Source of the DNA: Orbicella franksi
Lineage: Eukaryota
Assembly: GCA_964199315.1 (NCBI GenBank)
Contig: OZ116705.1
Location: 3,658,001 to 3,722,000, forward strand
Direction: 5' to 3'
DNA: 64,000 nucleotides
The notes under the pieces were generated by a model. That model did not search any database, had not been told where the DNA came from, and saw only the letters and a list, made by a program, of their open reading frames with translations. This document shows, in pieces, positions 1 through 38,833 of this stretch; within the stretch, counting starts at the first letter, position 1, and every line of letters starts with the position of its first letter. Both the position numbers and the translations under genes were made by a program.

Positions 1-3000
1 ACGTCTTCGAGCCACACACTGGTAGCATCGTGCATTAGACTTGACCTGTAGTGTTCAGCTGTTACTAATACCGTCGGTGACCTGGAAAACTTTCCCTAAG
101 AAAAAGAAAAGAAAACAAAGTAGGTTGACTAGTCATAGAAACATTGGCTTCTTGGACTAGGAGATCACTTCAGAGTTGGAAACGCTGCGTTTGAATGTTT
201 TCAATATATTTCAGAAAGCTAACAACCAAAACAGGTCAGTTACCTTAGAAAAGGCGACCGTTTGACAACTAGTTCCAGTCCACCATCTAGAGAACGTTTC
301 CTCCCCTGATATTCCTCCAGGGGGTGCACCTTGGTAGGCGACCCAGTCAATTGTGGCAAAGCTATCTGAGGGGTAGTCATTCCTGCCAGCTCGAGTAACA
401 CAGGCTGTAAACTGAGTGCTGTTAACACTTTCAACCCAAGGTGTGGCGGCCTCGTGCACCACGCTCGCATCAGAGTAATTAAAATGATTCACAGAGAGCT
501 GCACGTATATCTTCTTCAGAGGATAAAATATAAAAGGATCAAATTTGATAACTTCGCACTGATCTTCTGCCCAAGAGGGAGTGTTTTTGAAATTGTGTCT
601 TCCTCTCTGAACTGGAAAACCTACCAGGGAACAGAACGGAATAGCAAAAAAATACTGCATATGCTTCCACATGTACATTCAATTTATAATTCGAGTCTCC
701 CTGTTAACCATGCAGTCAGTTCTTCTGTCTATCCATTCTTCCCGCTGTAGATTGCACTTAATTTGTGTAAACAATAGTTCAAGTAAACAATAGAGTTAAA
801 CACTTCTTCTACTAAAATTATAGTTGCACTATTCCATGAACTAAACAAGCTTCCAAACACATAACAAGAAAACAAAATAGTTTCCATTACCTGTGCAGCT
901 TCCAGGATGGTACTTGGTGTAATTTGCACGTCGTGTACATATGTCTTTTTGCAGCAAACACAGGTTATCAAAAGTGAGGCCGTTAGAGCCGCATACTTGC
1001 TCTTCGTATGACGGGCAATTTTCTTCACAAATGCAGTCATGCTTGGTAGGAGTATAGGCTTTGCAGAAACTGTGGTATGTGCAGATAATATCCCTACATG
1101 GATCAAGGTCTGAAAATACAGAAGAAATAAAATAATTAGCTCAAGGGATTACGGTTCTTTCATAGACTAGGAAAGGATTGACGACATGAATGAGTACAAC
1201 GATGAATGGATGCACAATTTGTTTTTCCTTTTGGTTGCTGTTGTTGGTGCCTTAAAAAAAAAAAAAAAAAAAAAAATTATATAGAGCTATATATTGGATC
1301 AAAACAGAACAGAACTGTGTCTTTGTTCCTGTCGCCAGGTGGGAGGTGCTAAACTGATCAATGCTGACTTGTAGAAACATCTAATATAATGATGTAAAAG
1401 AATGCTGAATAGATTAACCTCGGGATGGACAAAAATAGTGTTAGGTTTTCTGAAAGAACAAGAAACAAAAACAAAACAAAACAAAAAAGGTTTTCTGACG
1501 TATGCGGAGAGATTACAGATTGTGGTAATATGACAACAGTGCTATGTATTCAGTGGCGGATCTAAGGGAAGGGCCCGGGTGCCCCTCTCCCCTTAACTTG
1601 GGTAGAAAAGAAGAAATCACAGAAGGAAGAAAAGCCGGCATGAGAAGCAAAATACCCCCCCCCCCCCCCTGCCCCTTAGTTCAAGGTCTGGATCCACCAC
1701 TGGTATTATTTAAGTTTCTACACATCAACATCCGTTGGTATGGGGCGAGGGTGGTTCAGATATAATAACACGGGGTGAGGGTGGTTCAGATAATAACACT
1801 TTTTACTCCAAGAAGGAAAATGCACGTTTCCATAGTTACCTCCGATTACCAGAAAGTTGACGATAACATCCGTTCTCTGGCCATTGTGCCCCGCGCTGTC
1901 CTTGATGCAAACTCGGCTGTGGGTTTTGTTCACTACCTGCGAAGGAACAAAGAAATTTTTAAAAGATACAGCAGAGACGCCAGAATGATGTTTGGACAAA
2001 TATGAATATGCGTGGGGGAAAATGAGATTTCATATTCCATCAGTATTTAGGAACAAACCATGCAACTATCTACAATATTGTATAAAAGTTGAAACTTCAA
2101 TGAGGTGTTAATCTAGTTGTCCGTGACATGCGTTAAAATGGTTTTCTACTGTTTCTTTTAAGTGTATGAAGAAACTGTACCTCCAGCCAATTTGCTAGAG
2201 GACCTTTGTGAGAGCAAGCTATGTTGGCACTGTTACTGTCTCCATTGAGGACTGTTGCAAGTACTACGGGCGGCTTAAAAAATGGCTCTTTAAACTTGAT
2301 AGTCTACAAAAGAAGTTGAAATTTACGATTAAGATGTGTTCTGATTCTGCCTGATGTATACCCAGATGTCTCAGAATGTAAATAAGGCTTGTTGTTGTAT
2401 TCATTATTAAAAGCATATGGAAATGAAATGGACAACTAATTACAAACATAAAGCGATTGTGCTCCGCCATTTGCAAAAGAAACTGGTGCCATAAATTCAC
2501 GTTGAGGCTTCTGAAACATTGAAGATCTTTCCAGTAGTAAAGGCTGTATATATTGTGATTACCTGGAACTATAATTTTATCTTCTTCTTAAACGATAATT
2601 ATTATCTGTAATGTTATCGACTTGTCGCCTTTTTATAGCTTTGTTAGTCCACTCTAATTTTCAACATGAACTCCAAAGCTACTGATATTAAACAAAATAC
2701 ACTTACCATACACAAAGCATAATTATTTTCTGCAGCTGGTACCTCGCTCTTGAGAAACACAAGCTTATGTGACTCTTTAGCTGCCCACGAGGATGAATAA
2801 TTCTCGTACGCCAACCAGTTCTAAGGATTAAATTAAGATAAAGACCGTACCTCAATAACGTCTCTGAAATTTCTCGCATATGATTAGTTGAAAAATCAAA
2901 TGAAATGGGTCTTAACGCGCAAGTTCCTATTCAATGAACATTAGTAATGAAATCATTTTCATGAATTAATCACTTACCACTACAATTTTGTTGTGCCCAC

Positions 3001-3964
3001 CATCTAATGCCCTTGACTCTCGCAAGCAAACCTCGAACTGGCTCATGGTAACATTTTCCATCCAAACATGCATGGCATCCTGTTTTTGTTTTTTGGTTCC
3101 ATGTTGGACAGTGACCTGAACTGTAGGAATCGTCGAAAAGGCCTAATGGGTGAAATGAAAAATTATGCATCTAAATACAATATGAAAACCAGTTAGCACT
3201 TGTTCTCCTGGAAACAGCTTGATAATCAACAAAATTTAAGTAGTAACCTTGCAGGGAATGGAAATGAATTGCCAGAAATATTTAACCGAACCGTTATTGG
3301 CGAAATTAACAATTGCATTCGTAACAAGGTGCTGTTAGGAAATTGCTCCCACTGTCCTAGTTTGGGATATTCGTGTCGAGCATATCTTCGATGCCTGAGA
3401 AAACTTGACAATATGATGTAAAAAATGATGAGTGGTCTCAATATCACAAATGCGTCGAAGTCCAATAAAAGCAAGAGAGCTAAGGTATTCTATTTTGCCC
3501 AAACCGATGCGGCCTTTACAATTTTGGCAACCCTTTAATTTTAGTTTGGATACATGCAGTCAGACGAAAACAACTCTTTTTCTTTACGAAGCAGCCAAGT
3601 TTTTTTACTCTTACCTTGGGAAAAATCACTTTTTTGCATTGCGTTCCAGTCGTAAATAAGCTAAAACTAGCCGATCCATCGTAAACTCCTGATTGGGAAC
3701 CTTGGAAAGCAAACCAATCGATGCTGGTGTTACCTCCGTTACCTTGGCCACCGAGCACCAGACAGGCCTTGAAACCGCTTGTTGTCACGTCTTCCACCCA
3801 AATAAAAGACGTATCGTGGACTTTCGACGGAATTTCTCCGTGATTGGCTGAGATATACACTCGCACAGGTGATCCTTTGGTAAAACTCTTGCTGAAGGAC
3901 ACATCTTCGCAATAGAGGCCACTGTTTCCCTTCTGTGGAATATGAACTTTACCCCACTGGGCAC
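1..3964 (-). CDS. Paralog A of the mosaic H-type-lectin-like/Kazal gene (3' part lies outside the window)
   Basis: Exons reconstructed by hand with GT-AG ends and matching phases: 3964-3615, 3142-2978, 2820-2707, 2303-2181, 1936-1840, 1109-891 (follistatin/Kazal), 620-244, 95-<1. All are open and the same length as the matching exons of the copy at 33526-37556. Confidence 0.87.
1551..1702. mobile_element. 152-bp MITE in an intron of paralog A
   Basis: TIRs CAGTGGCGGATC / GATCCACCACTG; GTATT duplicated at 1546-1550 and 1703-1707; the paralogous site at 35091-35095 is empty with a single GTATT. Confidence 0.9.
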
Positions 3965-5159
3965 CTGAGAAACAGTTTTAAAAAACGGGATTTAATCAGT
4001 CAAACCAATGGGAAATCATTTATGAAATTAGACTGATCTTCATTGTGGCGATTAAAAGTTCAAGCTTCAAATTAAACTGCGTTTGATTTCGCAGAAAAAT
4101 TGCGCTACATTTACTTCGGGAGTGTCAAAATATGTCTTCCTCATAATCCGCTCAAAAACAATTGTGATCGAATGGTTAACATCTAAGCGGTCTAAGCCGT
4201 TCAGAACAGCAAGTAAAATAAAATTAATAAAACTTAGATCACCTGAATTTCACTCGGAACAAAGAAAAACATGGGATATCAAAGTCACAGCTTAAAATTC
4301 TTTTGATGGGGACAAAGGTTTGATTTGAGGAAAGCGTAAGCGAGTTTTATTTCTCTAAGCAAGAGCCATGCAGTATACTCGAAAGCATCTCACACAGTTT
4401 AACGTAGTTATGTGCAACAATTGCTTCAGGATGTACAATAACGGGCAAGTGAGCAAAGAAATGCGACTGATGTCACTTTCGCGCAAGGTCGTGCATCAAC
4501 TCATGATCTGTCTCATGCTTATTTTCCTTTTGTGCTGACAAGTGATTTAAATCTGGCATGTTACACAGTGCGACAGGGTAGATGACCTCAAATCAAAGTC
4601 ATTTCTTGTCTCGCGGAAATCGGAATGATCTCCACTGTGCTGAGTAAATTTACTTGTGAACTGGCTATCAAGATGGTTTAGGATCACCGAAGCTTTACGA
4701 AGTGTCTTGTTGTGAGTTGAAATCTTCAACTTCAAATTCAAAGGATATTCAGTCAAGGAAATGAGATTTCCTCTGTTGGCAAAATTTGTGACTAATCGTT
4801 AATCCTTTTTGCAACAAATGAATTCATTCACCAAATTACTTACTTCCACGGAAAGTAGTACAGAAAAATGAAAACTTTCTTGCAATTGGGTGGCTTAGAA
4901 AAGAGCTCCTCTTGACTAAACTAACTCATGATCCTGGGAACGCATGAGCTCAATCGCTTCTTAGCGCTTTTCTTTATGGCTTATCTTGCTCTCATTCACT
5001 GACAAAACAAATCGCCCCTCAATGTGTCGAGGGCAAAAATAGAGAGACTTTCTTGTTTTAAAATCAGTGAGGTCTCCAGTTTTCCCCAATTTTCATTCAA
5101 AATAAAAGGGACTCAGGGTTTGATTACTAAATCAAATATTCGCTTATCGTTGGATTCAC

Positions 5160-26007: not shown

Positions 26008-28106
26008 AATGACTGAATTGTTGCATGAGCAACTACTGAAAATAAAACTGTGATAATCGTATTAATTCTTAATATTGGCAATCGGCTTTGAAGGGGTCTT
26101 TTCGGCGAAACGTCGCAGGAGTGACAAACGGACACGGTTTGAAGTGAAAAGGGCCACGCGTACTCAAGGATTTGATTGATTGTTTTGTGAGTCAGTCGCA
26201 CTTTTTAGCAATCAAATAAAGTCAATTGTTACTGATTATCATTCAGTGTGTGCCATTTTGACTCACTTAATAGTAGTACTTTAAATCCGCGAGGTCGAAA
26301 TCAAACTTTTCGCTAAAGGATGACAATCCTCTGTTTGCGACAACGACTGAGATTAAAGTTATTTCTACACTGGTGTTCGTTAACTGCCAGCCATGTGTGA
26401 CACTCAAAACAAGGGATTAGCAAAGCAAAGCACGAAACGCGAGGCTAAAGCAGAAAATCGAAGGTGTATTTAATTTTCGGTCTTGCGGGTTCATTTGTTG
26501 CAGTAAGGAGTTCGAGTAAACAAGACACGTACCAAGAAATAATAAACACACCAACCGCTTTCTTTATTACTTTACGGCTAAGTAACTACTTTTTTTACAG
26601 CGGTTATTCCCAAGTTAGTTGTATTAACACGGTATTAAGATATTAAGCAAGCCACCGAATGGCAACTTCAACGGCAACAGCAACGAGCAAAAGCCCTGAA
26701 AGTTGGTTACATTCTTAGTTGTTCTCTTCAAAATTTATTGGTGGTGCTGCTGATGCGAACCTGGTGAAATCATGCGTGCACCACATCTGTAAGGGGTTTA
26801 CTGACTTAACATATTCAGCTGAAAGCAGTTCTTAGTCAGCTAAGCAGACTAAACAGATCTCGGGAAATTGGGAAGATTGGTTCGCAGAACGACACTTACA
26901 AGTGATCGATGTCGTCTTTGTCGTTGCCATGGTAACCTTGAAACCCTTTTACTCCGGATTTGTTTCATTGACTTGTACAACGCGAAGTCAATTCCTTGAA
27001 ACAACGGCTTTTACTTTCATAATCGGTGATAAACAAAAAATTGTTGCATATGTGATGTAGGCTACTGTAGCTTTAAACTTTTGAAAAGGGAAACGTAAGA
27101 TATATTGATTTCACTATGGCCATTTAGCGGAAAGCTACTAATGACATACCTAATTGCTAAGTGTAAGTAGAAGCTTGGTAAAAACTGAATGGTATACGTA
27201 AATCAACAAATATAATTAATGCACATGGAAATCAAGCCGTCTGACGGTTTTAAGCTTAAGTGCTTCTTAAGATAATTTATCTGAAGCTATCGTAGCGATA
27301 TTATTAGTTAGTTATAACAAGTATTTCTTATTTTATTATTTATTATTTCCGGTAGGAATTAAAAAAAAAAAAAGAAAGAAAGAAACACTGTCTAGCCAAT
27401 ATTATTTGGAAGTTCCTATTCTTACAAGACAAAACTGACGGGATCAGACAGTAGTTGATTATCCCGAACTTAAAAATGATAATAAAACAACAACGAGGAC
27501 GACAAAAAGAAACAAAACAGACGGAAAAAACAAACAACGATACAAACAAGAGCTAAGAATTACGGTAAATCCCCGAAATATTGACATTAGCAATCTGTAA
27601 TTTTAGGATATTCTCACGGCACGGTTTTGTTTTCCGGGGGCAATTTTCAATTTAAAGTTTCGCCTACTTCGCTTATTTCCCTATCATGTTCTTTTAAAAA
27701 TGGATAAATCTCATTATTTTCCAAAAACAAAAAAAAGGAGTTAAAACATGAAAAACCTGTTAGAAAGTAGAAACTGTAGGAAATCCACTACTCCACCATC
27801 TCATTGGATAGTCTTTTACTGTTATCAAGCCATCTACAGAGTCAACGACTGAGGAATCGCCAATAATTGTGATATAAAACAAAAGTAAAGTCATCAATAT
27901 ATTAACGCAAATTATGTGTCTCTATCCTGTAAATCATAGAGTTGAAAATGTTTAATCAGCGATTCAAGTTGAGCCATCTCAGGTTAAGTGTGACGAAATT
28001 ATAATTTCATCACTCATAACGAAATCTAATTTTCTAATTTTTGAAAATTCCCATGAAAAAAAAGAAAGGAATATGAAAAGAAAGTTTCCGCTTCGTTCCA
28101 AGTCAC

Positions 28107-28750
28107 CTAGATGCTACAGACCACTCCTGCATCGTCCTTATGGTTGCAGTGGTTATTTCCCCATCCATCATGAGGACAGTTAAGTAGCGACGACTCTCCT
28201 CCCCCACAGTGGACATGATTCATCCAGATACGGCCAGAAGAAGTATGACCAAATACTGCGTCGTAAGTAGGGTAGCTTGCACCGGTAAAGCCCAACTGAC
28301 GACAAACCACGTCCGCCTCTTTCATATCCCAGCCGTTGTCACACACCGTTCCCCACTGTCCGTAGACGTACACTTCAACACGACCAAAGTGGAGACCTCC
28401 GTCCGCCAGACGAACGCCAGAAGATCCATAAGAGCACTCCACACTGGCATCTTGGCTGTGAGTGCAGTCTTCGCTGCCCCATCCACGGTGCCTGCATTCA
28501 TGCATATGGGCCTCACTCCCTGAGCATCCAACGTCATCCATCCAAATTGGATCAGCTCCTTGACCATGGTGGGCACCGCTGTATGCATGTCGAGCGCCGC
28601 GAGCGAAGCCAAGTTGCCTGCAGAAGACGTTAGCATCATTTATATCCCATGCGTCATCGCAGATTGTGCCCCACTTACCATCGTAAAAGATTTCAACTCT
28701 TCCCTCAGGTGACGGTATTGGTGAACTGTTGTTTAAACGGATAGATCCTC
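28107..28750 (-). CDS. Terminal exon with two group-A-type SRCR domains
   Basis: [33 protein letters not shown]...[10 protein letters not shown]...DASVEC, then [19 protein letters not shown]...DAGVVC, then stop. Confidence 0.95.
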
Positions 28751-31700
28751 CTGTAATGACTAATCATAAAAGACAAAAATAGACCGGATTTCCATTGAGT
28801 GTCGTTAAACCAAAACCACAGTACTCACTCTAGCCAGTCAGATATTATACCGAAATTTAGGTCAACCAATCAGAAATGGGAGCAAATGAACCCAGATGAC
28901 TCAAGGCACCGTAAAATACGAGCGAGTTCACTATTGGCTTTTGTTTAACCTCTGCCTGGGCTGACAAAAAAAGCGCGAATTAATTTTCAATCACTTGTAG
29001 AGGCCGGCAACCTAACTCTTTTTGAGAAAGCCCTAAAATTGTTTTTACATAATTATTTTATAATCCATTTTTTTAGATTTTTAGCAGTTAATTGTATTTG
29101 TAAATTATTTGCAATGGAGTCTTAGTATTAACTTTTAATATATATTTTATTTTAGGGAGTATTTTACATAGGGTCCGCCTCCTTAAACTCCCTTTGAGGG
29201 TGTCTTTTATATTTTATTCTTTTAACCCCTGAATAAAGTCTTGAATATGTTTATGTATGTATGTTAGCGTGGAGATGTAGGGCGAAAGGCAAATTTTAAC
29301 AACCTTATGAAAACCGGTCTAAGTAAATGATGTACACAAACAGTATCAAACAGAGTACAGCAATGCTCAAGTGATGAAAATAAACACACACGTAAGCTCA
29401 AATCTTAATTTTGTCTCGCGTACCAAATCGACAACAGCCTTTATTCTCTAAGACAATACGAAAGAGTTCTCAAATAAAATGTCCCAACGTTCAAACAGGA
29501 GTGTTTTTTCTTTTTTCTTTTTTTTTTTTTTTTTTTCTTTTTATGCGCGTACCCAATTATCGGTCATAATTATTGAAAAAATAGGCGCAGCACACTAGTC
29601 ATCATAAAAAGTGCTTAGTTGTTTTAGACATATATATTTTTCCATTAAATTGCAACGCATCCTACCTCGGTATTTTGCACGAAAGCCCTTGTATTGTTTA
29701 TTTTGGGCGGCATCGGTTGTAAACCTCACGTAAAGGTTCTTTGATGAGCTGATGACAGGAAGAGGTCGCTTGGATCCACTAAATTTTCCAATCTCCGGAG
29801 AGGAAAGTGATGTGCCATCATATACAGTTAGGTAATCGTCATATAACTCGGTGTCAAAACGATCGAATGTAAGTTCCACCCATGCATTTGAAGTTATTTT
29901 CCACTGACAATCCATACTGTTTTCGTACCACTGTCCACGCTTATTTGACTGTATAATGCCATCTATTGTAGTTAACTCAACCGTCTTATTTGGACAGGTG
30001 CTGGTAGAGTTCACCACGGGTGCTGTTAAATTAATGACAAATAAGAACAATTTACTTCAAACAGTTACTATTATCAAAATCCGTTGTTTATAGTTTCACA
30101 AACACATACAATCGCTTGTACGGCATGCACAAAGATTAAAAGTAAAACACAATCTATGATATTCATATAAAAAAAAAGGCTTAGAACAGTTCAGATAGCA
30201 TTTTTGCATTGTCTAGACCTATAAACTCGTCATTTAACTTCAAGGTTAAACACATTTTCTCTTAAATCGTCCACATGGTGAGAAAATTACAAGAGTTCCC
30301 GGCTTGGTCTAATCAGCGAGTTTCCAATTACACAACGATTAGAATTGGCCAAAACATTTTCCTTTTTTTGTTTGGACATACATTTACTTTAATCTACAAT
30401 TTTATAATCCCCCTCAATTTGCTTGTTTGTTTGTTGATGATGATGATGATAACGATGATTTCACCAATGTAATACAACTGCTTTGGGCACTCACCGCCAC
30501 AATATTGTTTGCCGTCGCCTCCGTAGCTTGCGTTACATCTGCAATCGTAGTAGCCAGGAATATTCACACACTGGGCTAATTTGTGGCACGAATAAAGACC
30601 CAACTTACACTCGTCTATATCTGTTTCGATAGAGAAATTTTAAAAAAAAGTTCTTCATTGTGCTAAAATAATACGTTTGCTACAAATTATAATGAAAATG
30701 AATGATTCTATTTATTAGGAATTCCAACGACTTCCATATATATGATGTCAATTCATAACTGAAATAAATAAAATAAATAGGATTTTGCAATGGCACATCC
30801 CACGGAGAAGCTCTTCGTCAAATGTTTTCAGATCGAATTGGATTTTAGAAGCGTGGTTTTCCCGCTAAGAGAAGACAATGTAAAAAAAAAAAACAACAAG
30901 TGTCAGTTTCATCATGGTTTTGCAGCATTTCTGTTTCTAAGAAAACTGTTATATTGTTCATAATTATTTCAGCCACCAGTCAAATCCTAGTTGGGATAAG
31001 AAGATCAGTTGTGATAGTGGTTGCTAGTTAATTTGTTAAATTTGGCTTGACGCTATTTATCACACAATTTCCCAGCTTGTTAAGTGATTTCTACACTACT
31101 TAACTGTCCAAAACAAGTATTTTCTTATGTTAAAGGAAAGCTGTACGAACCCGAACAATTGCCAGCTGCATTCTGCAGATATCCACTATCACACAGACAA
31201 GTGTAAGAACCATCATTGTTCACACAAGATGAACCTTGTGGACAGTTGTAGCCGAAGAGTTTGCATTCATCGTAATCTGTAATGAAAAGAAAAATACTAA
31301 TACGTATTTCCTTTTATATGGTGGAGATGAAAAAGGGGTTATTTTTAGTGTTAAAAATCATCACTATTGTAAACAAACGCGCAATGTTGAAACAGGCATT
31401 TATGATGAGAAGTTGTTCAGTCTGGGCTTTCGTGCGATAATCCGGTTAAATGGGTACACAGCAGTAATCATTGCTTCCAACCTATTATCTCATCTGATGG
31501 ACTCGATTAAAAACGTTAACTCACTAATCAATCCTCGATTTTGAAGCAAACCGTTTCCTCCTTAAGGACGCTTCAAGATGCCGATGGCTCATCATACGTT
31601 GCTGCAGCATCACCACACACCTTCTGAGAAAACAATGAAGACAATTGCAAGAAAACAAGAAAGGTATTTTTAAACTTACCTTTCTTACAAGTAAATCTGT

Positions 31701-34700
31701 GGCAGTCCGTGCAATTGACATCATTCCATTCATAGTCATGACCTTTAAGAAAACCCAGAGTATGCACGCAATCCTGATTGGCAAAGTTGTTTGGTTGATA
31801 TTTTGCCCAGTGATGGAAGTCAGTATTTGTTCCGTCGGTCCACACAAACTTTCCTTCTGTGTTGATATCAGACAGGCCCAACCAAGACTTTTCTCCGCCG
31901 TGTAAACTTTGAACAAACACATTTTCTTCTTGACTGTGGATACTAGGAAGATTAGCTCCTTGAATAGCGCATGTTCCCTGACTGAGGCTCCATGAACTGC
32001 AGGGAGCAACTTTTCTGTAGCAGTATCCTCTAAAGTAAAACCAGTCTTTTTCGCAAATGTCTGTTATAGAACAAAATGCATGATAAATTTAGCTCATACA
32101 TTGATATATTCATCATTTATCAATGAACTCCACCAATACCACATGCTCATGTTCGTTTGTTTCGCTGTACATTTATTCAGTCCAGCATTGAGTTATTGAG
32201 TCGCTATATATTTCGAATTTTGAAAATCCGGATTTGCTTGCTTTTTTTCAATTGTTGTTTTCAAAACAACAATCTATGTAAAACTAACATTTTTGCATAC
32301 CACCTCAAATACGTCAATTTAAGCACCTGCAGGTGCAAATTATTCTCACAGAACTTTAAACTGCAGGAAATAGATGGGCGCTTACCTGATACCACTGCAT
32401 ATGACACTGTGATGGGATCGAAGCGTTTAACAAAGAGTTCTTTGGCACAAATGCGAAATCCAGATTTGGTGATAAACTTGAAGAAAGAGGAAACAAACAA
32501 GAAGAATTCTGATACACGAGCTGTTATAAATGATTGCCCGTTAGTTATGTAATGCCCTTATCTAAGCAAACTGACAAAATGGAGGGGCATGTTTCATCCA
32601 AGCCGCTGTCTGCCGGTGGTGTTTTTATTAGTTATTTAAGTCAGATTATTGCCCAGACACAGGACCTTGGAGAAATATTAAACTTGTTATTGTACTTATC
32701 AATAATCTTGGAAATGTCCAATTTATTTTTTTTTTCCCTTAGGCATATTCAGTTCTTTTTTGTACCTCAATCCAGCTTACGATTCCGTTACACTCTGCGG
32801 CTGAGTTTCCACCACTGGTAGAATGTTTGGCTGTCACCAGCACTGTCGGGGGCTTGGGGTATGTCCAAGCAAACTTTAAATCCTGTTTATCATTTCAAAA
32901 AGAGCAAAGAAAGTTAATTAATCCTTAATGAAAGCCACTCGCGCCTACCTCCCCAACTCCAAGTTTAACCAATATATAATGCTTACCTTGCAAAAGGCGT
33001 AGTTGTACCTCTCTAAAGGTGGAACGTCGTTTGGAAAGTCGACCTCTTGGTGTTCTTTAAACAATGGCCGATGAAGGTTTTCGAAGGCCAACCAGTTCTG
33101 CAACAATGCAAGTACAAATTAATGGAAAAGCGTTACCACGTGTGGAAGTAAATATTAAATGATGCTTATACAGTACTGTTTCTTGGTAGTGTTAGTGCTC
33201 AATGATTGATTGACTGACTGACTGACCGACCGACCGACCGAATGAATGAATGAACGAACGAACGAACAAACGAACGTACGAATGAATGAATGAATGAATG
33301 AAAGAATGAATGAATGAATGAATGAATGAATGACCGACTGACTGACTGACTGACTGCTGACTGACTGACTGACTGAATGACTGACTGACTGACTGACTGA
33401 CTGACTGAATGAATGAATGAATGAATGAATGAATGAATGAATGAATGAATGATAAGACCAGACCAGACTAAGTTAAAGTATTGCATTACATGACAATGAA
33501 TTATGCCAAATTTAACAATACATACCACTGAGATATCGTCATGAACTCCAGCAAAGTTTTGTAGTTCCCGGAGACAGATCTTAAAGGAACTCGCTGACAC
33601 GTCTTCGAGCCACACACTGGTAGCATCGTGCATTAGACTTGACCTGTAGTGTTCAGCTGTTACTAATACCGTCGGTGACCTGGAAAACTTTCCCTAAGAA
33701 AAAGAAAAGAAAACAAAGTAGGTTGACTAGTCTTAGAACATTGGCTTCTTGGACTGGGAAATCACTTAAGAGTTGGAAATGCTGGGTTTGAATGTTTTCA
33801 ATATGTTTCAGAAAGCTAACAACCAAAACAGGCCAGTTACCTTAGAAAAGGCGACCGTTTGACAGCTAGTTCCAGTCCACCATCTAGAGAACATTTCTTC
33901 CCCTGCTATTCCTCCAGGGGGCGCACCTTGGTAGGCGACCCAGTCAATTGTGGCAAAGCTATCTGAGGGGTAGTCATTCCTGCCAGCTCGAGTAACACAG
34001 GCTGTAAACTGAGTGCTGTTAACACTTTCAACCCAAGGTGTGGCGGCCTCGTGCACCACGCTCGCATCAGAGTAATTAAAATGGTTCACAGAGAGCTGCA
34101 CGTATATCTTCTTCAGAGGATAAAATATAAAAGGATCAAATTTAATAACTTCGCACTGATCTTCTGCCCAAGAGGGAGTGTTTTTGAAATTGTGTCTTCC
34201 TCTCTGAACTGGAAAACCTACGAGAGAACAGAACGGAATAGCAAAAAAATACGACATGTGCTTCCACGTGTACATTCAATTTATAATTCGAGTCTCCCTG
34301 TTAACCATGCAGTCAGTTCTTCTGCCTATCCATTCTTCCCACTGTAGACTGCACTTAATTTGTGTAAACAATAGTTCAAGTAAACAATAAAGTTTCACAC
34401 CTCTTATACTAAACTTATACTTATACCATTCCATGAACTAAACAAGCTTCCAAAACAAAAAGCAAAAAGAAAAGAAACTAAATACTTCCCATTACCTGTG
34501 CAGCTTCCAGGATGGTACTTGGTGTAATTTGCACGTCGTTTACATATGTCTTTTTGCAGCAAACACAGGTTGTCAAAAGTGAGACCGTTAGAGCCGCATA
34601 CTTGCTCTTCGTATGACGGGCAATTTTCTTCACAAATGCATTTATGCTCGGTAGGAGTGTAGGCTTTGCAGAAACTGTGGTATGTGCAGATAATATCCCT

Positions 34701-37556
34701 ACATGGATCAAGGTCTGAAAGTACAGAAGAAATAAAATAATTAGCTTAAGGGATTACGGTTCTTTCATAGACTAGGAAAGGATTGACTACATGAATGAGT
34801 ACATATGTGAATGGATGCACAGTTTGTTTTTCTTGTTGTTGTTGTTGTTGGTGCCTTAAAAAACCTTTATAGCTATATATTAGCAGGATCAAAACAGAAC
34901 AGAACTGTGTTTTTGTTCCTTTCGCCAGGTGGGAAATGTTAAACTGATCAATGTTGACTTGTAGAAACACCCAATATATTGATGTAAGAAAATGCTGAAT
35001 AGATTAACGGAGGGATGGACAAAAGTAGTGTTAGGTATTCTGACGTAAGTGGAGAGATTACACGTTGTGGTACTGTGGCAACAGTGCTCTGTATTATTTT
35101 AATTTTCTACACATCAACATACGTTGGTATGGGGTGAGGGTGGTTCGGATAACAATACTGGGTAAGGGTGGTTCAGATAATAACACGGGTTGAGGGTGGT
35201 TCAGAGAATAACACTTTTACCACCAAGAAGGAAGATGCACGTTTCCATAGTTACCTCCGATAACTAGAAAGTTGACGATTACATCTGTTCTCTGGCCATT
35301 GTATCCCGCGCTGTCTTTGATGCAAACTCGGCTGTGGGTTTTGTTCACTACCTGCGAGAGAACAAAAAAATTTTAAGACATACAGTAGATACGCCATAAT
35401 GATCTTTGAACAAATATCAATATGCGAGGGGGAAAATAAGATTTCAAAGTCCATCAATATTTATGAACAAACCATGCAACCATCGACAATGTTGTGTAAA
35501 AATTGAAATTATTAATGAGGTGTTAATCTAGTTGTCCGTGAAATGTGTTAAAATTGTTTTCTACTGTTTCTGTTAAGTGTATGAAGAAACTGTACCTCCA
35601 GCCAATTTGCCAAAGGACCCTTGTGAGAGCAAGCTATGTTGGCATTGTTACTGTTTCCATTGAGGACTGTTGCAAGTACCACGGGCGGCTTAAAAAATGG
35701 CTCTTTAAACTTGATAGTCTACAAAAGAAGTTGAAATTTAACATCAAGATACGCTCTGATTCTGCCTGATATATACCCCGATGCTTCAGAATGTTAAAGA
35801 TTTATGGCCATGTAAATACGGCTTGCTGTTGTATTCATTATTAAAAGCATATGGAAATGAAATGGACAACTCACTACAAACATAAAGCGATTGTGCTCCG
35901 CCATTCGCGACAGAAACTGGTGCCATAAATTCACGTTTAGGTTTCTGAAACATTGAAGATCTTTCCAGTAGTGAAGCCTGTATATATTGTGTTTACTTGG
36001 AACTATAATTTTATCTCCCTCGTAAACGATAATCAGTAGTTATCATTATCTGTAATGTGATCAACTTGTAATAATCATACAATGCCCTTGATTGTCGCCT
36101 TTTTATAGCTTTGTTGTCTCACTCTGATGTTCAACATGAACTCCAAAGTTATTGATATTAAACAAAATATACTTACCATGCACAAAGCATAATTATTTTC
36201 TGCAGCTGGTACCTCACTCTTGAGAAATACTAGCTTATGTGACTCTTTAGCTTCCCACGAGGATGAATAATTCTCGTACGCCAACCAGTTCTGAAGGATT
36301 AAATAAAATAAAGACCTCAATAACTTTAAAATCATTTCTCGTATATGATTAGATGAAAAATCAAATCAAATGGGTCTTAACGGGCAAGTGTCTATTCAAT
36401 AAGTGAGAGCAAAGGTAGATATCTAAGGCTGGGTACTTTAGATGTCTGTAATCACCCTTTCCTTTGTTTAAACATTAGTAATGAAATCATTTTCATGAAT
36501 TCATCACTTACCACTACAATTTTGTTGTGCCCGCCATCTAATGCCCTTGATTCTCGCAAGCAAACCTCGAACTGGTTGATGGTAACATTTTCCATCCAAA
36601 CATGCATGGCATCCTGCTTTTGCTTTTTGGTTCCATGTTGGACAGTGACCTGAACTGTAGGAATCGTCGAAAAGGCCTAATGGTGAAACGAAAAAGTATG
36701 CTTCTAAATACAATATGAAAACCAATTAGCACTTCCTCTCCTGGAAACAGCTTCATGATCACTGAACAAAGTATAAGTAGTAATCCTGCAGGGAATGGAA
36801 ATGAATTGCCAGAAATATTTAGCCGAACTGTTATTGGCAAAATTCACAATTGCACCTGTAACAAGGAACCTGTTAGGAAATTGCTCCCACTGTCCTAGTT
36901 TGGGATATTCGTGTTAAGCATGTCTTCGATGCCAGAGAAAACTTGACAATACGATGTAAAAAAATGATGACTGGTTCCAATATCACAAATGCGTCGAAGT
37001 CCAATAAAAACAAGAGAGCTAAGGTATTCTATTTTGCCCAAACCGATGCGGCCTTTAAAACTTTGGTAACCCGTTAATTTTAGTTTGGATACATGCAGCC
37101 AGGCGAAAACAACTCTTTGTTTTTTTTTTTACTTTTCCTGTGCATTAATAAATTACGAAGCAGCCAAGTTTTTTTTTTTTTCTTTTCTTTTCTTTTTTAA
37201 TCTTACCTTGGGAAATTTCACTTTTTTGCATTGCGTTCCAGTGGTAAATAAGCTAAAACTAGCCGATCCATCGTAAACTCCTGATTGGGAACCTTGGAAA
37301 GCAAACCAATCGATGCTGGTGTTACCTCCGTTACCTTGGCCACCGAGCACCAGACAGGCCTTGAATCCGCTTGTTGTCACGTCTTCCACCCAAATAAAAG
37401 ACGTATCGTGGACTTTCGACGGAATTTCTCCGTGATTGGCTGAGATGTACACTCGCACAGGTGATCCTTTGGTGAAACTCTTGCTGAAAGACACATCTTC
37501 GCAATAGAGGCCACTGTTTCCCTTCTGTGGAATATGAACTTTACCCCACTGGGCAC
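28107..37556 (-). CDS. Paralog B: mosaic, probably secreted protein with 3x H-lectin-like, follistatin/Kazal, 3x H-lectin-like, CTL, EGF_CA, CUB, SRCR, SRCR (about 1162 aa with the candidate first exon)
   Basis: Exons 37556-37207, 36676-36512, 36290-36177, 35718-35596, 35351-35255, 34714-34496, 34217-33841, 33693-33526, 33097-32987, 32882-32766, 32476-32386, 32060-31680, 30620-30495, 30022-29666, 28750-28107. All are GT-AG, phases chain without a break, there are no internal stops, and TAG ends at 28107. Confidence 0.92.
28790..28990. mobile_element. Intronic interspersed repeat
   Basis: TTTCCATTGAGTGTCGTTAAACCAAAACC...CCAATCAG...ATTGGCTTTTG resembles an abundant coral repeat (from recall). 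Confidence 0.45.
29666..30022 (-). CDS. CUB domain exon (phase 1-1)
   Basis: [17 protein letters not shown]...[11 protein letters not shown]...[18 protein letters not shown]...LYVRFTTD...GFRAKY. Confidence 0.93.
30495..30620 (-). CDS. Calcium-binding EGF exon (phase 1-1)
   Basis: [41 protein letters not shown], with six Cys and the DIDEC consensus. Confidence 0.93.
31680..32060 (-). CDS. C-type lectin domain exon (phase 1-1)
   Basis: [13 protein letters not shown]...WLGLSD...WTDG...QPNN..DCV...WNDVNC...FTC. Confidence 0.93.
32386..34217 (-). CDS. Second five-exon cassette: three H-type-lectin-like domains
   Basis: Repeated pattern C-x-x-V-x-F...F-x2-3-P-x-V-x-V...W-[VL]-E-x-V-[ST]-x3-F-x-x-C...W-x-A, recognised by eye as H_lectin-like. 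Confidence 0.75.
33203..33452. repeat. Compound tetranucleotide microsatellite (ATTG/ACTG/ACCG/AATG/AACG)
   Basis: Seen directly; intronic. Confidence 0.95.
34496..34714 (-). CDS. Follistatin-N plus Kazal module exon (phase 1-1)
   Basis: [14 protein letters not shown]...[33 protein letters not shown]...HPGSC, with ten Cys. Confidence 0.92.
35255..37556 (-). CDS. First five-exon cassette: three H-type-lectin-like domains
   Basis: Same motif pattern and same exon phases (1-0, 0-0, 0-0, 0-0, 0-1) as 32386-34217. Confidence 0.75.
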
Positions 37557-38784
37557 CTGAGAAAACAGTTTAAATAAACCGGGTTTAATCACTCAAACCA
37601 ATGAGAAATCATTTATGATGAAATTAGACTGATCTTCATTGTGGAGATTAAAAGTTCAAACTTCAAAATGCGTTTGATTCGCAGAAAAGTTGCGCTACTT
37701 CGGGAGTGTCAAAATATTTCCATAAACTGCTCAAAAATAATTCTGATCCGAATGGTCAACATCCGAAGTAGTCCAAGATTCAAAACAGCAAGTAAAATAA
37801 AATAAAAACTTAGATCAGCTGAATTTCACTCGTAACAAAAAAAACATGATATCAAAGTCACAGCTTAAAATTCTTTTGATTGAGGAAGAGGTTTGATTTA
37901 AGGGAAGCGTTAGCGGGTTTTATTCCTCTATTATAGCTAAAGCCATGCAATCCACTCGAAAGCGTGTCGCACAGTATAACGTGGTCATGCACCAAGTGCT
38001 CCAGGATGTACAATAGCTGCCAGGTGATCAAAGAAATGCGACTGATGTCACTTTAGTGCGAGGACGTGCATCAACTCATGATCAGTCTCATGCTTATTTT
38101 CCTTTTGTGCTGACAAGTGATTTAAATCTGGCATGTTACACAGTGCGACAGGGTAGATGACCTCAGATCAAAGTCATTCCGTGTCTCACGAAAATCGAAA
38201 TGATCCCCAGCGTGCTAAGTAAATTTACTTGTGAACTGGTTATTAAGATGGTTTAGGATCACCCGAACCATGCTTGTTTTTTTACGGAGTGTCGTCATGT
38301 GTTGTGAGTTGACGTCTTCAGCTTCAAATTCAAAAGATATTCAGTCAAGGAGGTTCCCCTCTCTTGGCAAAATTTGTGACTTATCGTTCTAGTATCCTTT
38401 TAGCAACAAATGACTTCATTTACCAAATGACTTACTTCTAAGGAAAGATGCGGAGAATAATGAAAACTTGTTTGCAATCGAGTGGCTTGGAAAATTGTTC
38501 CTCTTGACTTAAACTAAATCATGATCCTGAGAACGCATAAGCTCAATCGGTGTAAAACTCACCTTTATCTGGCAAAGCTTCCCTTTTTAGCGCTTTTCTT
38601 TATGGTTTATCAAGCTCCTCCTTCACTCACCAAACAAATCGCATCTCAATGTGTCGAGAGCAAAAATAGAGACTTTCTGGTTTTAAAAACAAAGAGGTGC
38701 CTTGTTTTCCCCAATTTCCATTCAAAATAAAAAGGACTCGAGGTTTGATTACTAAATCAAATATTCGCTTCTCGTTGGACTCAC

Positions 38785-38833
38785 CGTTAACTTCAGCGAC
38801 TCGAAGGTACTTGAGGTTACTTAGCCATAACAT
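38785..38833 (-). CDS. Candidate first coding exon of paralog B (MLWLSNLKYLRVAEVNG)
   Basis: Consensus phase-1 donor G|GTGAGT fitting the phase-1 acceptor at 37556; conserved in paralog A. The true start may lie further upstream. Confidence 0.45.

What the first reader, a model, noticed from the sequence alone, without database searches (positions are those of the whole stretch)
28107..38833. Mosaic secreted protein with 3+3 H-type-lectin-like domains: candidate single-chain pseudo-hexameric lectin and pattern-recognition hub
Seen: phase-consistent splicing gives two blocks of three homologous, roughly 90-100 aa, two-Cys beta-type repeats separated by a follistatin/Kazal module, followed by CTL, EGF_CA, CUB and two SRCR domains, with no transmembrane or obvious GPI tail. 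Established: H-type lectins (Helix pomatia agglutinin, discoidins, octocoral SLL-2) bind Gal/GalNAc at interfaces between protomers of a trimer; HPA and SLL-2 are hexamers, and SLL-2 acts on symbiotic dinoflagellates. CTL and SRCR are microbe-binding modules. Inference: each block of three diverged repeats may fold as an intramolecular trimer, giving a hexamer-like lectin with non-equivalent sites fused to three other recognition modules, suited to mucus or symbiont/microbe recognition. I do not recognise this architecture as a named family.
Basis: partly seen in the sequence, partly recalled or inferred. Interest (0 to 1): 0.85.

Follow-up and report, generated by a model that had tools for sequence, protein, structure and literature searches.

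The report
LePin-family coral lectin gene
This is an expressed coral gene for a secreted member of the published LePin lectin family (the family whose Xenia member binds symbiotic algae), and structure prediction supports the idea that each of its two triplets of H-type-lectin domains folds into one compact three-fold body.

Summary
The domain chain is real. A 17-exon minus-strand gene (41359 to 28107) encodes about 1214 aa: signal peptide, 3 H-lectin-like domains, follistatin/Kazal, 3 H-lectin-like domains, C-type lectin, 2 EGF_CA, CUB, 2 SRCR, with no membrane anchor.

RNA data show 12 of the 16 introns, including the links from H-lectin block 2 to CTL to EGF. An Oculina protein is collinear at 79% identity to the stop codon.

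Two corrections. The first coding exon is at 41359-41290, not 38833. There are two EGF_CA domains, not one.

This is the LePin family (Hu et al. 2020, 2023). It has more than 130 exon-level matches in this genome, and the C-terminal heads vary between paralogs.

The pseudo-trimer idea is supported by prediction on the Oculina ortholog. Block 1 gives pLDDT 91 and pTM 0.90. Its whole-body PDB matches are single-chain C1q, TNF and adiponectin trimers and the PCSK9 C-terminal domain. Its single-domain matches include HPA, SLL-2 and discoidin I, at Z about 5.

Packing of the two blocks into a "hexamer" has only weak support (pTM 0.73; ipSAE 0.35, best control 0.02). Glycan binding was not tested.

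This is a new member of a known kind, with a testable structural hypothesis.

The parts
41290..41359 (-). Exon 1: ATG at 41359 and the signal peptide (MAFTAKEGALLLVCCCLAFSGVKG)
   Evidence: The loose end of RNA contigs and reads at the exon-2 acceptor matches 41292-41321 exactly. GT donor. It is the only hydrophobic segment in the protein.
37207..37556 (-). Exon 2: H-lectin-like domain D1 plus the N-terminal half of D2
   Evidence: RNA contigs span it and join it to exon 3 (records 6 and 9). Pfam H_lectin 19.7 bits, below the gathering score.
36512..36676 (-). Exon 3: core of D2
   Evidence: RNA joints on both sides. Pfam H_lectin 17.5 bits.
36177..36290 (-). Exon 4: end of D2 and start of D3
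   Evidence: RNA joints 36290|36512 and 35718|36177.
35596..35718 (-). Exon 5: middle of D3
   Evidence: RNA joints. Pfam H_lectin 13.6 bits.
35255..35351 (-). Exon 6: end of D3
   Evidence: RNA joints 35348|35593 (cut +3) and 34714|35255.
34496..34714 (-). Exon 7: follistatin/Kazal module between the two triplets
   Evidence: Kazal_2 E 5e-10. In the ortholog's model, Foldseek matches the FS domains of FSTL1, hevin, follistatin and SPARC. RNA joints.
33841..34217 (-). Exon 8: D4 plus the N-terminal half of D5
   Evidence: RNA joint 34215|34494 (cut +2). 37% identical to exon 2. The donor at 33841 is inferred from phase and from the ortholog.
33526..33693 (-). Exon 9: core of D5
   Evidence: RNA joint 33097|33526. 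The acceptor at 33693 is inferred.
32987..33097 (-). Exon 10: end of D5 and start of D6
   Evidence: RNA joints.
32766..32882 (-). Exon 11: middle of D6
   Evidence: RNA joints.
32386..32476 (-). Exon 12: end of D6
   Evidence: RNA joints 32476|32766 and 32060|32386.
31680..32060 (-). Exon 13: C-type lectin domain
   Evidence: Lectin_C E 1.4e-18. It is joined to exon 12 by an RNA joint and to exon 14 by a loose end.
31151..31276 (-). Exon 14: first calcium-binding EGF domain
   Evidence: EGF_CA E 7.6e-11. The RNA loose end at 31680 matches 31247-31276 with one mismatch.
30495..30620 (-). Exon 15: second calcium-binding EGF domain
   Evidence: EGF_CA E 1e-7. The boundaries are inferred from phase 1, GT-AG sites and the ortholog.
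29666..30022 (-). Exon 16: CUB domain
   Evidence: CUB E 2.5e-20. The boundaries are inferred.
28107..28759 (-). Exon 17: two SRCR domains and the stop codon (28107-28109)
   Evidence: SRCR E 3e-65, two stretches. The acceptor at 28759 was chosen because it reproduces the ortholog's 'YRVLTGGSIR' junction.

Best explanation
This is a transcribed scleractinian gene for a secreted, soluble, LePin-family pattern-recognition protein of about 1214 aa.

Shown.
- The exon chain: signal peptide, 3 H-lectin domains, FS/Kazal, 3 H-lectin domains, CTL, 2 cbEGF, CUB, 2 SRCR.
- Expression of the gene.
- Homology to a large anthozoan family that includes Xenia LePin.

Predicted.
- Each run of three H-type-lectin domains folds into one rigid pseudo-three-fold body. 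In effect it is a single-chain version of the homotrimer that HPA, SLL-2 and discoidin form. The two bodies are bridged by the follistatin-like module and may touch each other.

Inferred.
- As in H-type lectin trimers, glycan sites would lie at the three non-identical inter-domain interfaces of each body.
- Together with the CTL and the CUB-SRCR tail, this would give multivalent binding of microbial or algal surfaces in mucus or the gastric cavity, as shown experimentally for Xenia LePin.
- Across paralogs the N-terminal 3+Kazal+3 core, followed in most listed members by CTL and EGF, is constant. The C-terminal head (here CUB-SRCR) is exchanged at phase-1 introns.
For: Gene model and expression.
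- RNA joints and loose ends support 12 of 16 introns.
- All sites are GT-AG and the frame stays open.
- Oculina P0237 is 79% identical over aa 28-1211 and has the same tail.

Family.
- The exon profile finds 471 cluster representatives at E<=1e-3 among 1.84 billion proteins.
- Named members come from many anthozoans: Oculina, Porites, Pocillopora, Stylophora, Acropora, Montipora, Orbicella, Nematostella, Actinia, Exaiptasia, Dendronephthya and Paramuricea. One is from the sponge Oscarella.
- Members carry precomputed Pfam H_lectin, and most also Kazal, Lectin_C and EGF.
- The three published Xenia LePin antibody peptides map in the same order, at 60-73% identity, onto octocoral members. On this protein they map to aa 223-232, 617-624 and 790-799.

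H-lectin identity.
- Pfam H_lectin scores 62-78 bits in homologues.
- For model domain D2, VIA-align gives HPA 2ccv Z 5.2 / rmsd 2.6 / 83 aligned, discoidin I 2w94 Z 4.8, and SLL-2 3wmp Z 4.7.

Pseudo-trimer.
- AF2 on block 1 of P0237 gives pLDDT 91.3 and pTM 0.90.
- The whole-block matches (model residues 1-282) are single-chain C1q, Cbln1, APRIL-BAFF and adiponectin trimers, the PCSK9 C-terminal domain and monomeric herpesvirus dUTPases.
- The same three-domain body recurs in AFDB and ESM Atlas models of bacterial, archaeal and fungal H_lectin proteins, at TM 0.65-0.75 over about 250-300 residues.
- Stand-alone triple H_lectin proteins of about 275-355 aa exist on bacteria-like contigs.

Secretion.
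- Only the N-terminus is hydrophobic.

Function of the family.
- Xenia LePin is secreted and binds algae, and RNAi reduces new alga-containing cells.
- Multiple LePin paralogs are expressed in Stylophora transitional alga-hosting cells, whose profile the authors link to phagocytic uptake of symbionts.
Against: - The structures were predicted on the Oculina ortholog (about 80% identical), not on the window's own spliced protein.
- No coordinates or PAE were available, so three-fold packing is inferred from pTM and from the kind of structures matched.
- All VIA Z-scores are under 8, the range the tool warns may reflect only a common arrangement.
- Foldseek against PDB found no H-lectin.
- Profile searches of PDB sequences found none either.
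- The window's own exon translations stay below the Pfam gathering score.
- HPA-type sugar-binding residues were not mapped.
- In the tree, octocoral sequences form their own clade. This gene is therefore a paralog or co-ortholog of LePin, not its one-to-one ortholog, and LePin's algal role may not transfer.
- Block 1 to block 2 contact has only weak support.
Confidence: 0.7

Rival explanations
1. The two H-lectin-like pseudo-trimers are a non-lectin structural core: a rigid stalk or an oligomerisation or docking platform. Ligand recognition is then done by the CTL domain and the exchangeable C-terminal head, here CUB-SRCR.
For: - The 3+Kazal+3 core is the constant part of the family, while the C-terminal heads vary: FReD, D8C, TLDc, F5/8C, CUB-SRCR, olfactomedin and pentraxin. 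In many immune receptor families the variable part is the one that recognises ligands.
- The resemblance to solved H-lectins is remote. No PDB sequence hit was found and structural Z is about 5.
- The binding residues were not verified.
Against: - Xenia LePin has no extra head beyond CTL and EGF, yet it binds algae.
- The H_lectin Pfam signal is retained in all family members.
- Strong conservation of polar and aromatic residues in D2 and D5 (D, W, E, R, E, H, W) is compatible with a binding site as well as with packing.
Confidence: 0.2
2. The six domains are independent beads on a string, and they form canonical H-lectin trimers only between three separate polypeptide chains.
For: - All solved H-type lectins are homotrimers of single domains (established knowledge; HPA, SLL-2 and discoidin entries).
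- No coordinates were inspected here.
Against: - pTM 0.90 for the three-domain block and 0.73 for all seven domains. These values are far above what would be expected for freely jointed domains.
- Linkers between the last strand of one domain and the first strand of the next are only about 5 residues.
- The triplet recurs as a unit of three or six domains across phyla, and as stand-alone proteins of about 280 aa.
Confidence: 0.07
3. The architecture is a gene-model artefact: the CTL-EGF-CUB-SRCR exons belong to a separate downstream gene.
Against: - RNA joints link D6 to CTL, and a loose end links CTL to EGF1.
- The phase-1 GT-AG chain stays open to the stop codon.
- At least ten annotated proteins from Oculina, Pocillopora, Montipora and metagenomes are collinear through CUB and both SRCR domains.
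- RNA contigs hold 0.44 of the sampled words of 28100-38099. Exons make up about 0.36 of that stretch.
Confidence: 0.03

Closest known systems
LePin (Xenia sp. Xe_002591; Hu et al. Nature 2020, PMC7332420; bioRxiv 10.1101/2022.12.13.520278) and LePin-like proteins of anthozoans
   Same: - Signal peptide and no transmembrane segment.
- H_lectin domains on both sides of a Kazal module, followed by a C-type lectin and EGF domains.
- The published LePin peptides map in the same order onto this protein.
- Membership of a large anthozoan paralog family.
   Different: - This paralog carries an extra CUB + 2 SRCR tail.
- It sits in a scleractinian subfamily, apart from the octocoral clade that would hold LePin.
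- Binding to algae has not been shown for it.
- The passages of the LePin papers read here list H_lectin domains but do not describe a 3+3 count or pseudo-trimers. The full texts were not read.
H-type lectins with solved structures: Helix pomatia agglutinin (2ccv), octocoral SLL-2 (3wmp), Dictyostelium discoidin I (2w94); Pfam PF09458
   Same: - Six-stranded beta-sandwich domain of about 90-100 aa.
- Pfam H_lectin match in the family.
- Structural superposition of about 83 residues at rmsd 2.6-3.0 and 17-19% identity.
- A three-fold assembly.
   Different: - Here the three protomers are three diverged domains of one chain (23-34% identical to each other within a block), so any sites would be non-equivalent.
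- No sequence-level hit to the solved proteins.
- Sugar-binding residues were not checked.
Single-chain or natural pseudo-trimers of beta-sandwich domains: PCSK9 C-terminal domain, monomeric herpesvirus dUTPases, engineered single-chain C1q, adiponectin and TNF-family trimers
   Same: These are the best whole-body structural matches to the predicted triplet, with 171-209 residues aligned across model residues 1-282.
   Different: There is no sequence relationship, the domain folds differ (jelly rolls), and Z is only 3.7-5.5. This is an analogy of arrangement, not homology.
DMBT1 / CUZD1-type secreted SRCR-CUB scavenger proteins
   Same: The C-terminal CUB + SRCR modules are secreted and are candidate microbe-binding modules. 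One related coral fragment is auto-named DMBT1.
   Different: DMBT1 has no H_lectin, Kazal or CTL part and has many more SRCR repeats plus a ZP domain (established knowledge). Here CUB-SRCR is only one of many alternative tails on the LePin core.

Membership tests
LePin / LePin-like family | N-terminal signal peptide and no transmembrane segment (secreted) | tested here: met
   Exon 1 encodes a hydrophobic leader. A Kyte-Doolittle scan finds no other hydrophobic window, and the C-terminus is ...DDAGVVCSI.
LePin / LePin-like family | Domain set H_lectin + Kazal + C-type lectin + EGF in that order (the criterion used by Hu et al.) | tested here: met
   Kazal_2, Lectin_C and EGF_CA all exceed their gathering scores on exon translations. 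H_lectin passes on the 79% identical ortholog.
LePin / LePin-like family | Sequence homology to Xenia LePin | tested here: inconclusive
   The full LePin sequence was not obtainable. Its three published peptides map in the same order onto octocoral family members at 60-73% identity. They also map onto this protein at 62-80% over 8-10 residues each.
LePin / LePin-like family | One-to-one orthology with Xenia LePin | tested here: not met
   In the tree of the D1-D6 region, octocoral sequences form their own clade. This gene lies in an 18-row clade of scleractinian and unnamed metagenome sequences (support 100) with mostly CUB-SRCR tails.
LePin / LePin-like family | Binds Symbiodiniaceae and promotes their uptake | not testable with these tools
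   This is known only for Xenia LePin, by RNAi and antibody staining.
H-type lectin (Pfam PF09458) | Pfam H_lectin match at or above the gathering score (24 bits) on the window's own translations | tested here: not met
   The exon pieces score 19.7, 17.5 and 13.6 bits. The best-matching domain, D2, is split between two exons, and the spliced protein could not be submitted.
H-type lectin (Pfam PF09458) | Pfam H_lectin match in full-length orthologs and paralogs | tested here: met
   P0237 62.4 bits, P0001 68, P0054 78 and P0004 57. PF09458 is precomputed for nearly all of the 120 listed homologues.
H-type lectin (Pfam PF09458) | Six-stranded beta-sandwich that superposes on HPA, SLL-2 and discoidin | tested here: met
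   Each domain has six strands. VIA gives HPA Z 5.2 / rmsd 2.6 / 83 of 99 residues, discoidin I Z 4.8 and SLL-2 Z 4.7, all within the top 10 of 48,161 chains. The Z-scores are modest. Foldseek missed these entries.
H-type lectin (Pfam PF09458) | Three-fold assembly of the domains | tested here: inconclusive
   This rests on prediction only. The triplet gives pTM 0.90, and its whole-body matches are single-chain trimers or pseudo-trimers. No coordinates were inspected and there is no experiment.
H-type lectin (Pfam PF09458) | Conserved Gal/GalNAc-binding residues at protomer interfaces | not tested
   No residue-level alignment to HPA or SLL-2 could be obtained. PDB sequence searches gave no hit.

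The most novel reading that the evidence does not exclude
The conserved N-terminal core of the whole LePin family is a single-chain pseudo-hexameric H-type lectin. It would consist of two pseudo-trimers clamped by a follistatin-like domain, giving up to six non-equivalent inter-domain glycan sites. Corals would then use this core as a constant platform and graft alternative recognition heads onto it by phase-1 exon shuffling: CUB-SRCR, fibrinogen, D8C, TLDc, F5/8C, olfactomedin and pentraxin. The result would be a diversified repertoire of secreted receptors for symbionts and microbes.
Probability: 0.3. Interest if true: 0.7.

Novelty: new member of a known kind. Interest (0 to 1): 0.5.

Why it matters
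LePin is one of the few coral proteins with experimental evidence for a role in recognising symbiotic algae. How it binds them is unknown.

If its H-lectin domains form two single-chain pseudo-trimers, the binding sites are built between non-identical domains and can diverge independently. That gives a concrete structural hypothesis for symbiont specificity. It also defines constructs to test: each triplet of about 280 aa expressed alone.

The size of the family in this genome and the swapping of C-terminal heads suggest a diversified repertoire of secreted receptors. This helps explain why a single "LePin ortholog" is hard to name in stony corals.

Tried and rejected
Searches that found nothing useful.
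- Profile and single-sequence searches of PDB sequences with the exon profile, with a 54-sequence D2/D5 profile, and with a canonical H_lectin domain gave no H-lectin hit.
- Foldseek against PDB with the 643-aa and 282-aa models found only FS/Kazal domains and weak PCSK9 rows. VIA-align was needed to see HPA, SLL-2 and discoidin.
- The Xenia LePin sequence was not among the proteins fetched, so only its three published peptides could be mapped.
- No literature on tandem or pseudo-trimeric H-type lectins was found in the open library.

Complex prediction on block 1 against block 2.
- ipSAE 0.35 against a best control of 0.02. The runs agree in at least 69% of contacts and the partner's pLDDT is at least 78. 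The verdict was 'weak support'.
- The mark was reached by 51 of 78 solved complexes and 2 of 108 mismatched pairs. A pass at 0.60 or under was seen in only 5 of those 78 solved complexes and in all 4 mismatches that passed.
- The alignments I supplied were not used.

Rejected or unresolved.
No RNA joint lands there, and the real upstream exon is at 41.3 kb.
- The signal-peptide exon of the tandem paralog was not found in the window by similarity.
- Long ORFs elsewhere in the window have no Pfam hit.
- Sugar-binding residues were not mapped, because no residue-level alignment was available.


Full report
WHAT IS THERE

The finding lies on the minus strand. Stop-free segments in 28.1-37.6 kb translate to six homologous two-Cys segments, a Kazal module, a C-type lectin, two EGF_CA, a CUB and two SRCR domains.

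I laid RNA contigs and raw RNA-seq reads from coral runs on 31600-37599. This gave nine explicit CT..AC (minus-strand GT-AG) joints plus one joint read from contig pieces. It also gave two loose ends.

- The loose end at the acceptor of the first H-lectin exon matches 41292-41321 exactly.
- The loose end at the CTL donor matches the first EGF exon at 31247-31276.

After shifting the ambiguous cuts, every intron is GT-AG and the frame is open from ATG 41359 to the stop at 28107-28109. The model has 17 exons and about 1214 aa.

Twelve of the 16 introns are seen in RNA. The other four are supported by reading phase and by Oculina patagonica protein P0237 (LOC144665190), which is collinear at 79% identity from aa 28 to the last residue.

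The signal peptide MAFTAKEGALLLVCCCLAFSGVKG is encoded at 41359-41290. It is the only hydrophobic stretch, so the protein should be secreted and soluble.

The two triplets are built from matching five-exon cassettes: 350/165/114/123/97 nt and 377/168/111/117/91 nt. Internal introns are phase 0 and module boundaries are phase 1.

ARE THE REPEATS H-TYPE LECTIN DOMAINS?

On the window's own exon translations, Pfam H_lectin scores 19.7, 17.5 and 13.6 bits. All are under the gathering score of 24. The best-matching domain, D2, is split between exons.

In full-length relatives the model passes clearly: P0237 62.4 bits, P0001 68, P0054 78 and P0004 57. PF09458 is precomputed for almost all of the 120 listed homologues.

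Sequence searches of PDB chains found no H-lectin, even with family profiles. Foldseek found none either.

VIA-align of the predicted triplet against 48,161 PDB representatives placed three H-type lectins within the top ten for domain D2:
- HPA 2ccv: Z 5.2, rmsd 2.6, 83 of 99 residues, 17% identity.
- Discoidin I 2w94: Z 4.8.
- SLL-2 3wmp: Z 4.7.

The same list also holds trimeric phage tailspike and pyocin fibre tip domains.

Each domain is a six-stranded sandwich. The Z-scores are modest, but the convergence of three independent H-lectin entries with the Pfam evidence makes membership of the H_lectin superfamily secure. Nothing here shows that it binds sugar.

THE FAMILY HAS A NAME

A profile of the two single-exon units found 471 cluster representatives at E<=1e-3 among 1.84 billion proteins.

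A word-indexed search with the Oculina homologue returned 184 proteins at E<=1e-10. The named ones are anthozoan, and the sources call nearly all of them 'uncharacterized'.

- It is a marker of the endosymbiotic cell type in the soft coral Xenia (PMC7332420).
- Its authors define LePin-like proteins by H_lectin + Kazal + CLECT + EGF.

The three antibody peptides printed in that paper map in the same order onto octocoral family members at 60-73% identity. On this protein they map to aa 223-232 (D3), 617-624 (D6) and 790-799 (the CTL/EGF junction).

Two 2026 preprints already report LePin homologues with diverse architectures in Palythoa, and multiple LePin paralogs expressed in transitional alga-hosting cells of Stylophora.

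PLACE IN THE FAMILY

This genome holds at least 133 exon-level matches to the profile. They lie in large tandem arrays, for example C8 29.8-30.5 Mb, C2 28.8-29.0 Mb, C13 about 10 Mb and C3 30.9-32.3 Mb. One is a tandem paralog at window 1-3965 whose exons are 90-98% identical at the protein level.

A maximum-likelihood tree of the D1-D6 region (78 rows) gives three results.
- The window's protein groups with two Oculina CUB-SRCR proteins and one from Pocillopora (support 100). This group lies inside an 18-row clade of scleractinian and unnamed metagenome sequences.
- Octocoral sequences form a separate clade. The gene is therefore a LePin paralog or co-ortholog, not its one-to-one ortholog.
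- C-terminal heads change at least 37 times on the tree, against a minimum possible of 16. The heads are CUB-SRCR, FReD, D8C, TLDc, F5/8C, olfactomedin, pentraxin, Ig-COLFI and PHR.

So the core of 3 H_lectin + FS/Kazal + 3 H_lectin, followed in most listed members by CTL and EGF, is constant, and the tail is shuffled.

THE PSEUDO-TRIMER AND PSEUDO-HEXAMER IDEA

Spliced sequences cannot be passed by reference. I therefore modelled the Oculina ortholog P0237, which is about 80% identical.

Results of the predictions:
- Block 1 alone (282 aa, 118-row alignment): mean pLDDT 91.3 and pTM 0.90.
- All six domains plus the FS module (643 aa, 77 rows): pLDDT 87.2 and pTM 0.73.

A pTM of 0.90 for three domains joined by linkers of about five residues means one rigid body.

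The PDB chains that align across the whole body (model residues 1-282, 171-209 residues aligned, Z 3.7-5.5) are almost all trimers written as one chain:
- single-chain C1q head;
- Cbln1 C1q trimer;
- single-chain APRIL-BAFF-BAFF;
- single-chain adiponectin;
- the pseudo-three-fold C-terminal domain of PCSK9;
- the monomeric, trimer-mimicking dUTPases and dUTPase-like proteins of herpesviruses.

Independent predicted models show the same three-domain body.
- AFDB cluster representatives named 'H-type lectin domain-containing protein', and other entries of unlisted origin, match at TM 0.65-0.72 over the whole query.
- ESM Atlas clusters from Bacteroidota, Pseudomonadota, Bathyarchaeota and fungi match at TM 0.71-0.75.
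- Stand-alone triple H_lectin proteins of 275-355 aa sit in bacteria-like gene neighbourhoods: Wzy_C and TetR, or ComEC, MgsA and FliN.

The triplet thus behaves as an evolutionary and structural unit.

I rate the intramolecular pseudo-trimer at about 0.75. The caveats are that I saw no coordinates or PAE, and that all Z-scores are under 8.

The 'hexamer' part is weaker.
- pTM 0.73 is higher than two independent bodies would be expected to give.
- The two blocks folded as separate chains scored ipSAE 0.35 against a best control of 0.02. The runs agreed in at least 69% of contacts and the partner's pLDDT was at least 78.
- The tool grades this 'weak support'. The mark was reached by 51 of 78 solved complexes and 2 of 108 mismatched pairs. 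Passes at 0.60 or under were seen in only 5 of those 78 solved complexes and in all 4 mismatches that passed.

The module between the blocks is follistatin-like: FSTL1, hevin, SPARC and follistatin FS domains at prob 1.00. It resembles these more than a classical free Kazal inhibitor.

HOW IT MOST LIKELY WORKS

Shown: a secreted mosaic protein that is transcribed and belongs to the LePin family.

Predicted: two rigid single-chain H-lectin pseudo-trimers.

Inferred:
- Glycan sites lie at the non-identical inter-domain interfaces.
- These, with the CTL and the CUB-SRCR tail, give multivalent recognition of algal or microbial surfaces.
- The function is analogous to Xenia LePin.

The main rival is that the conserved core is a scaffold and the variable head does the recognising.

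VERDICT

The structural hypothesis is supported by prediction and appears not to be in the open literature searched. The gene itself is a new member of a known, named family. Interest 0.5.

Noticed in passing
window 1-3965 (minus strand): A tandem paralog of the same gene. Its exons for D1 to D5 are 90-98% identical at the protein level to the gene studied. Its 3' part runs off the window, and no copy of the signal-peptide exon was found by similarity.
   Followed up: partly
window 43472-43832 (plus strand): SRCR-like coding remnants lie in two different frames (for example ...WETECDDERDTNDANVVCRQL... and ...NNVHCQGEEASLLEC...). They look like a frameshifted SRCR pseudo-exon about 2 kb upstream of the gene's first exon.
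   Followed up: partly
window 33240-33452: A (GAAT)n microsatellite of about 53 copies lies inside the intron between exons 9 and 10. It produces the long spurious 'SFIHSFIH' ORFs, and reads are cut there.
   Followed up: yes
window 36737-37130 and 34859-35225: RNA-run contigs cover these intronic stretches at notable depth in run X4 (161 and 13). They may be a repeat or transposon, another transcript, or DNA carry-over.
   Followed up: no
window 37274/37324 and 32766/32798: Raw reads of run X24 have loose ends inside exon 2 and at exon 11. The cause could be reads from close paralogs or alternative isoforms.
   Followed up: no
G000 contigs C8 29.8-30.5 Mb, C2 28.8-29.0 Mb, C13 9.9-10.1 Mb, C3 30.9-32.3 Mb: Large tandem arrays of LePin-like exon pairs, with at least 133 matches genome-wide. 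Several on C13, C14 and C9 contain in-frame TAG stops, which suggests pseudogenes.
   Followed up: partly
P0099, P0297 (locus L013), P0096, P0102: Stand-alone triple H_lectin proteins of 275-355 aa sit on bacteria-like metagenome contigs, next to Wzy_C and TetR, or ComEC, MgsA and FliN. The single-chain triplet therefore does not seem to be a cnidarian invention.
   Followed up: partly
family tree of A2 region: Near-identical N-terminal cores in Oculina carry different C-terminal heads (CUB-SRCR, FReD, olfactomedin or Ig-COLFI). This implies recent head swapping, although some cases could be annotation artefacts.
   Followed up: partly
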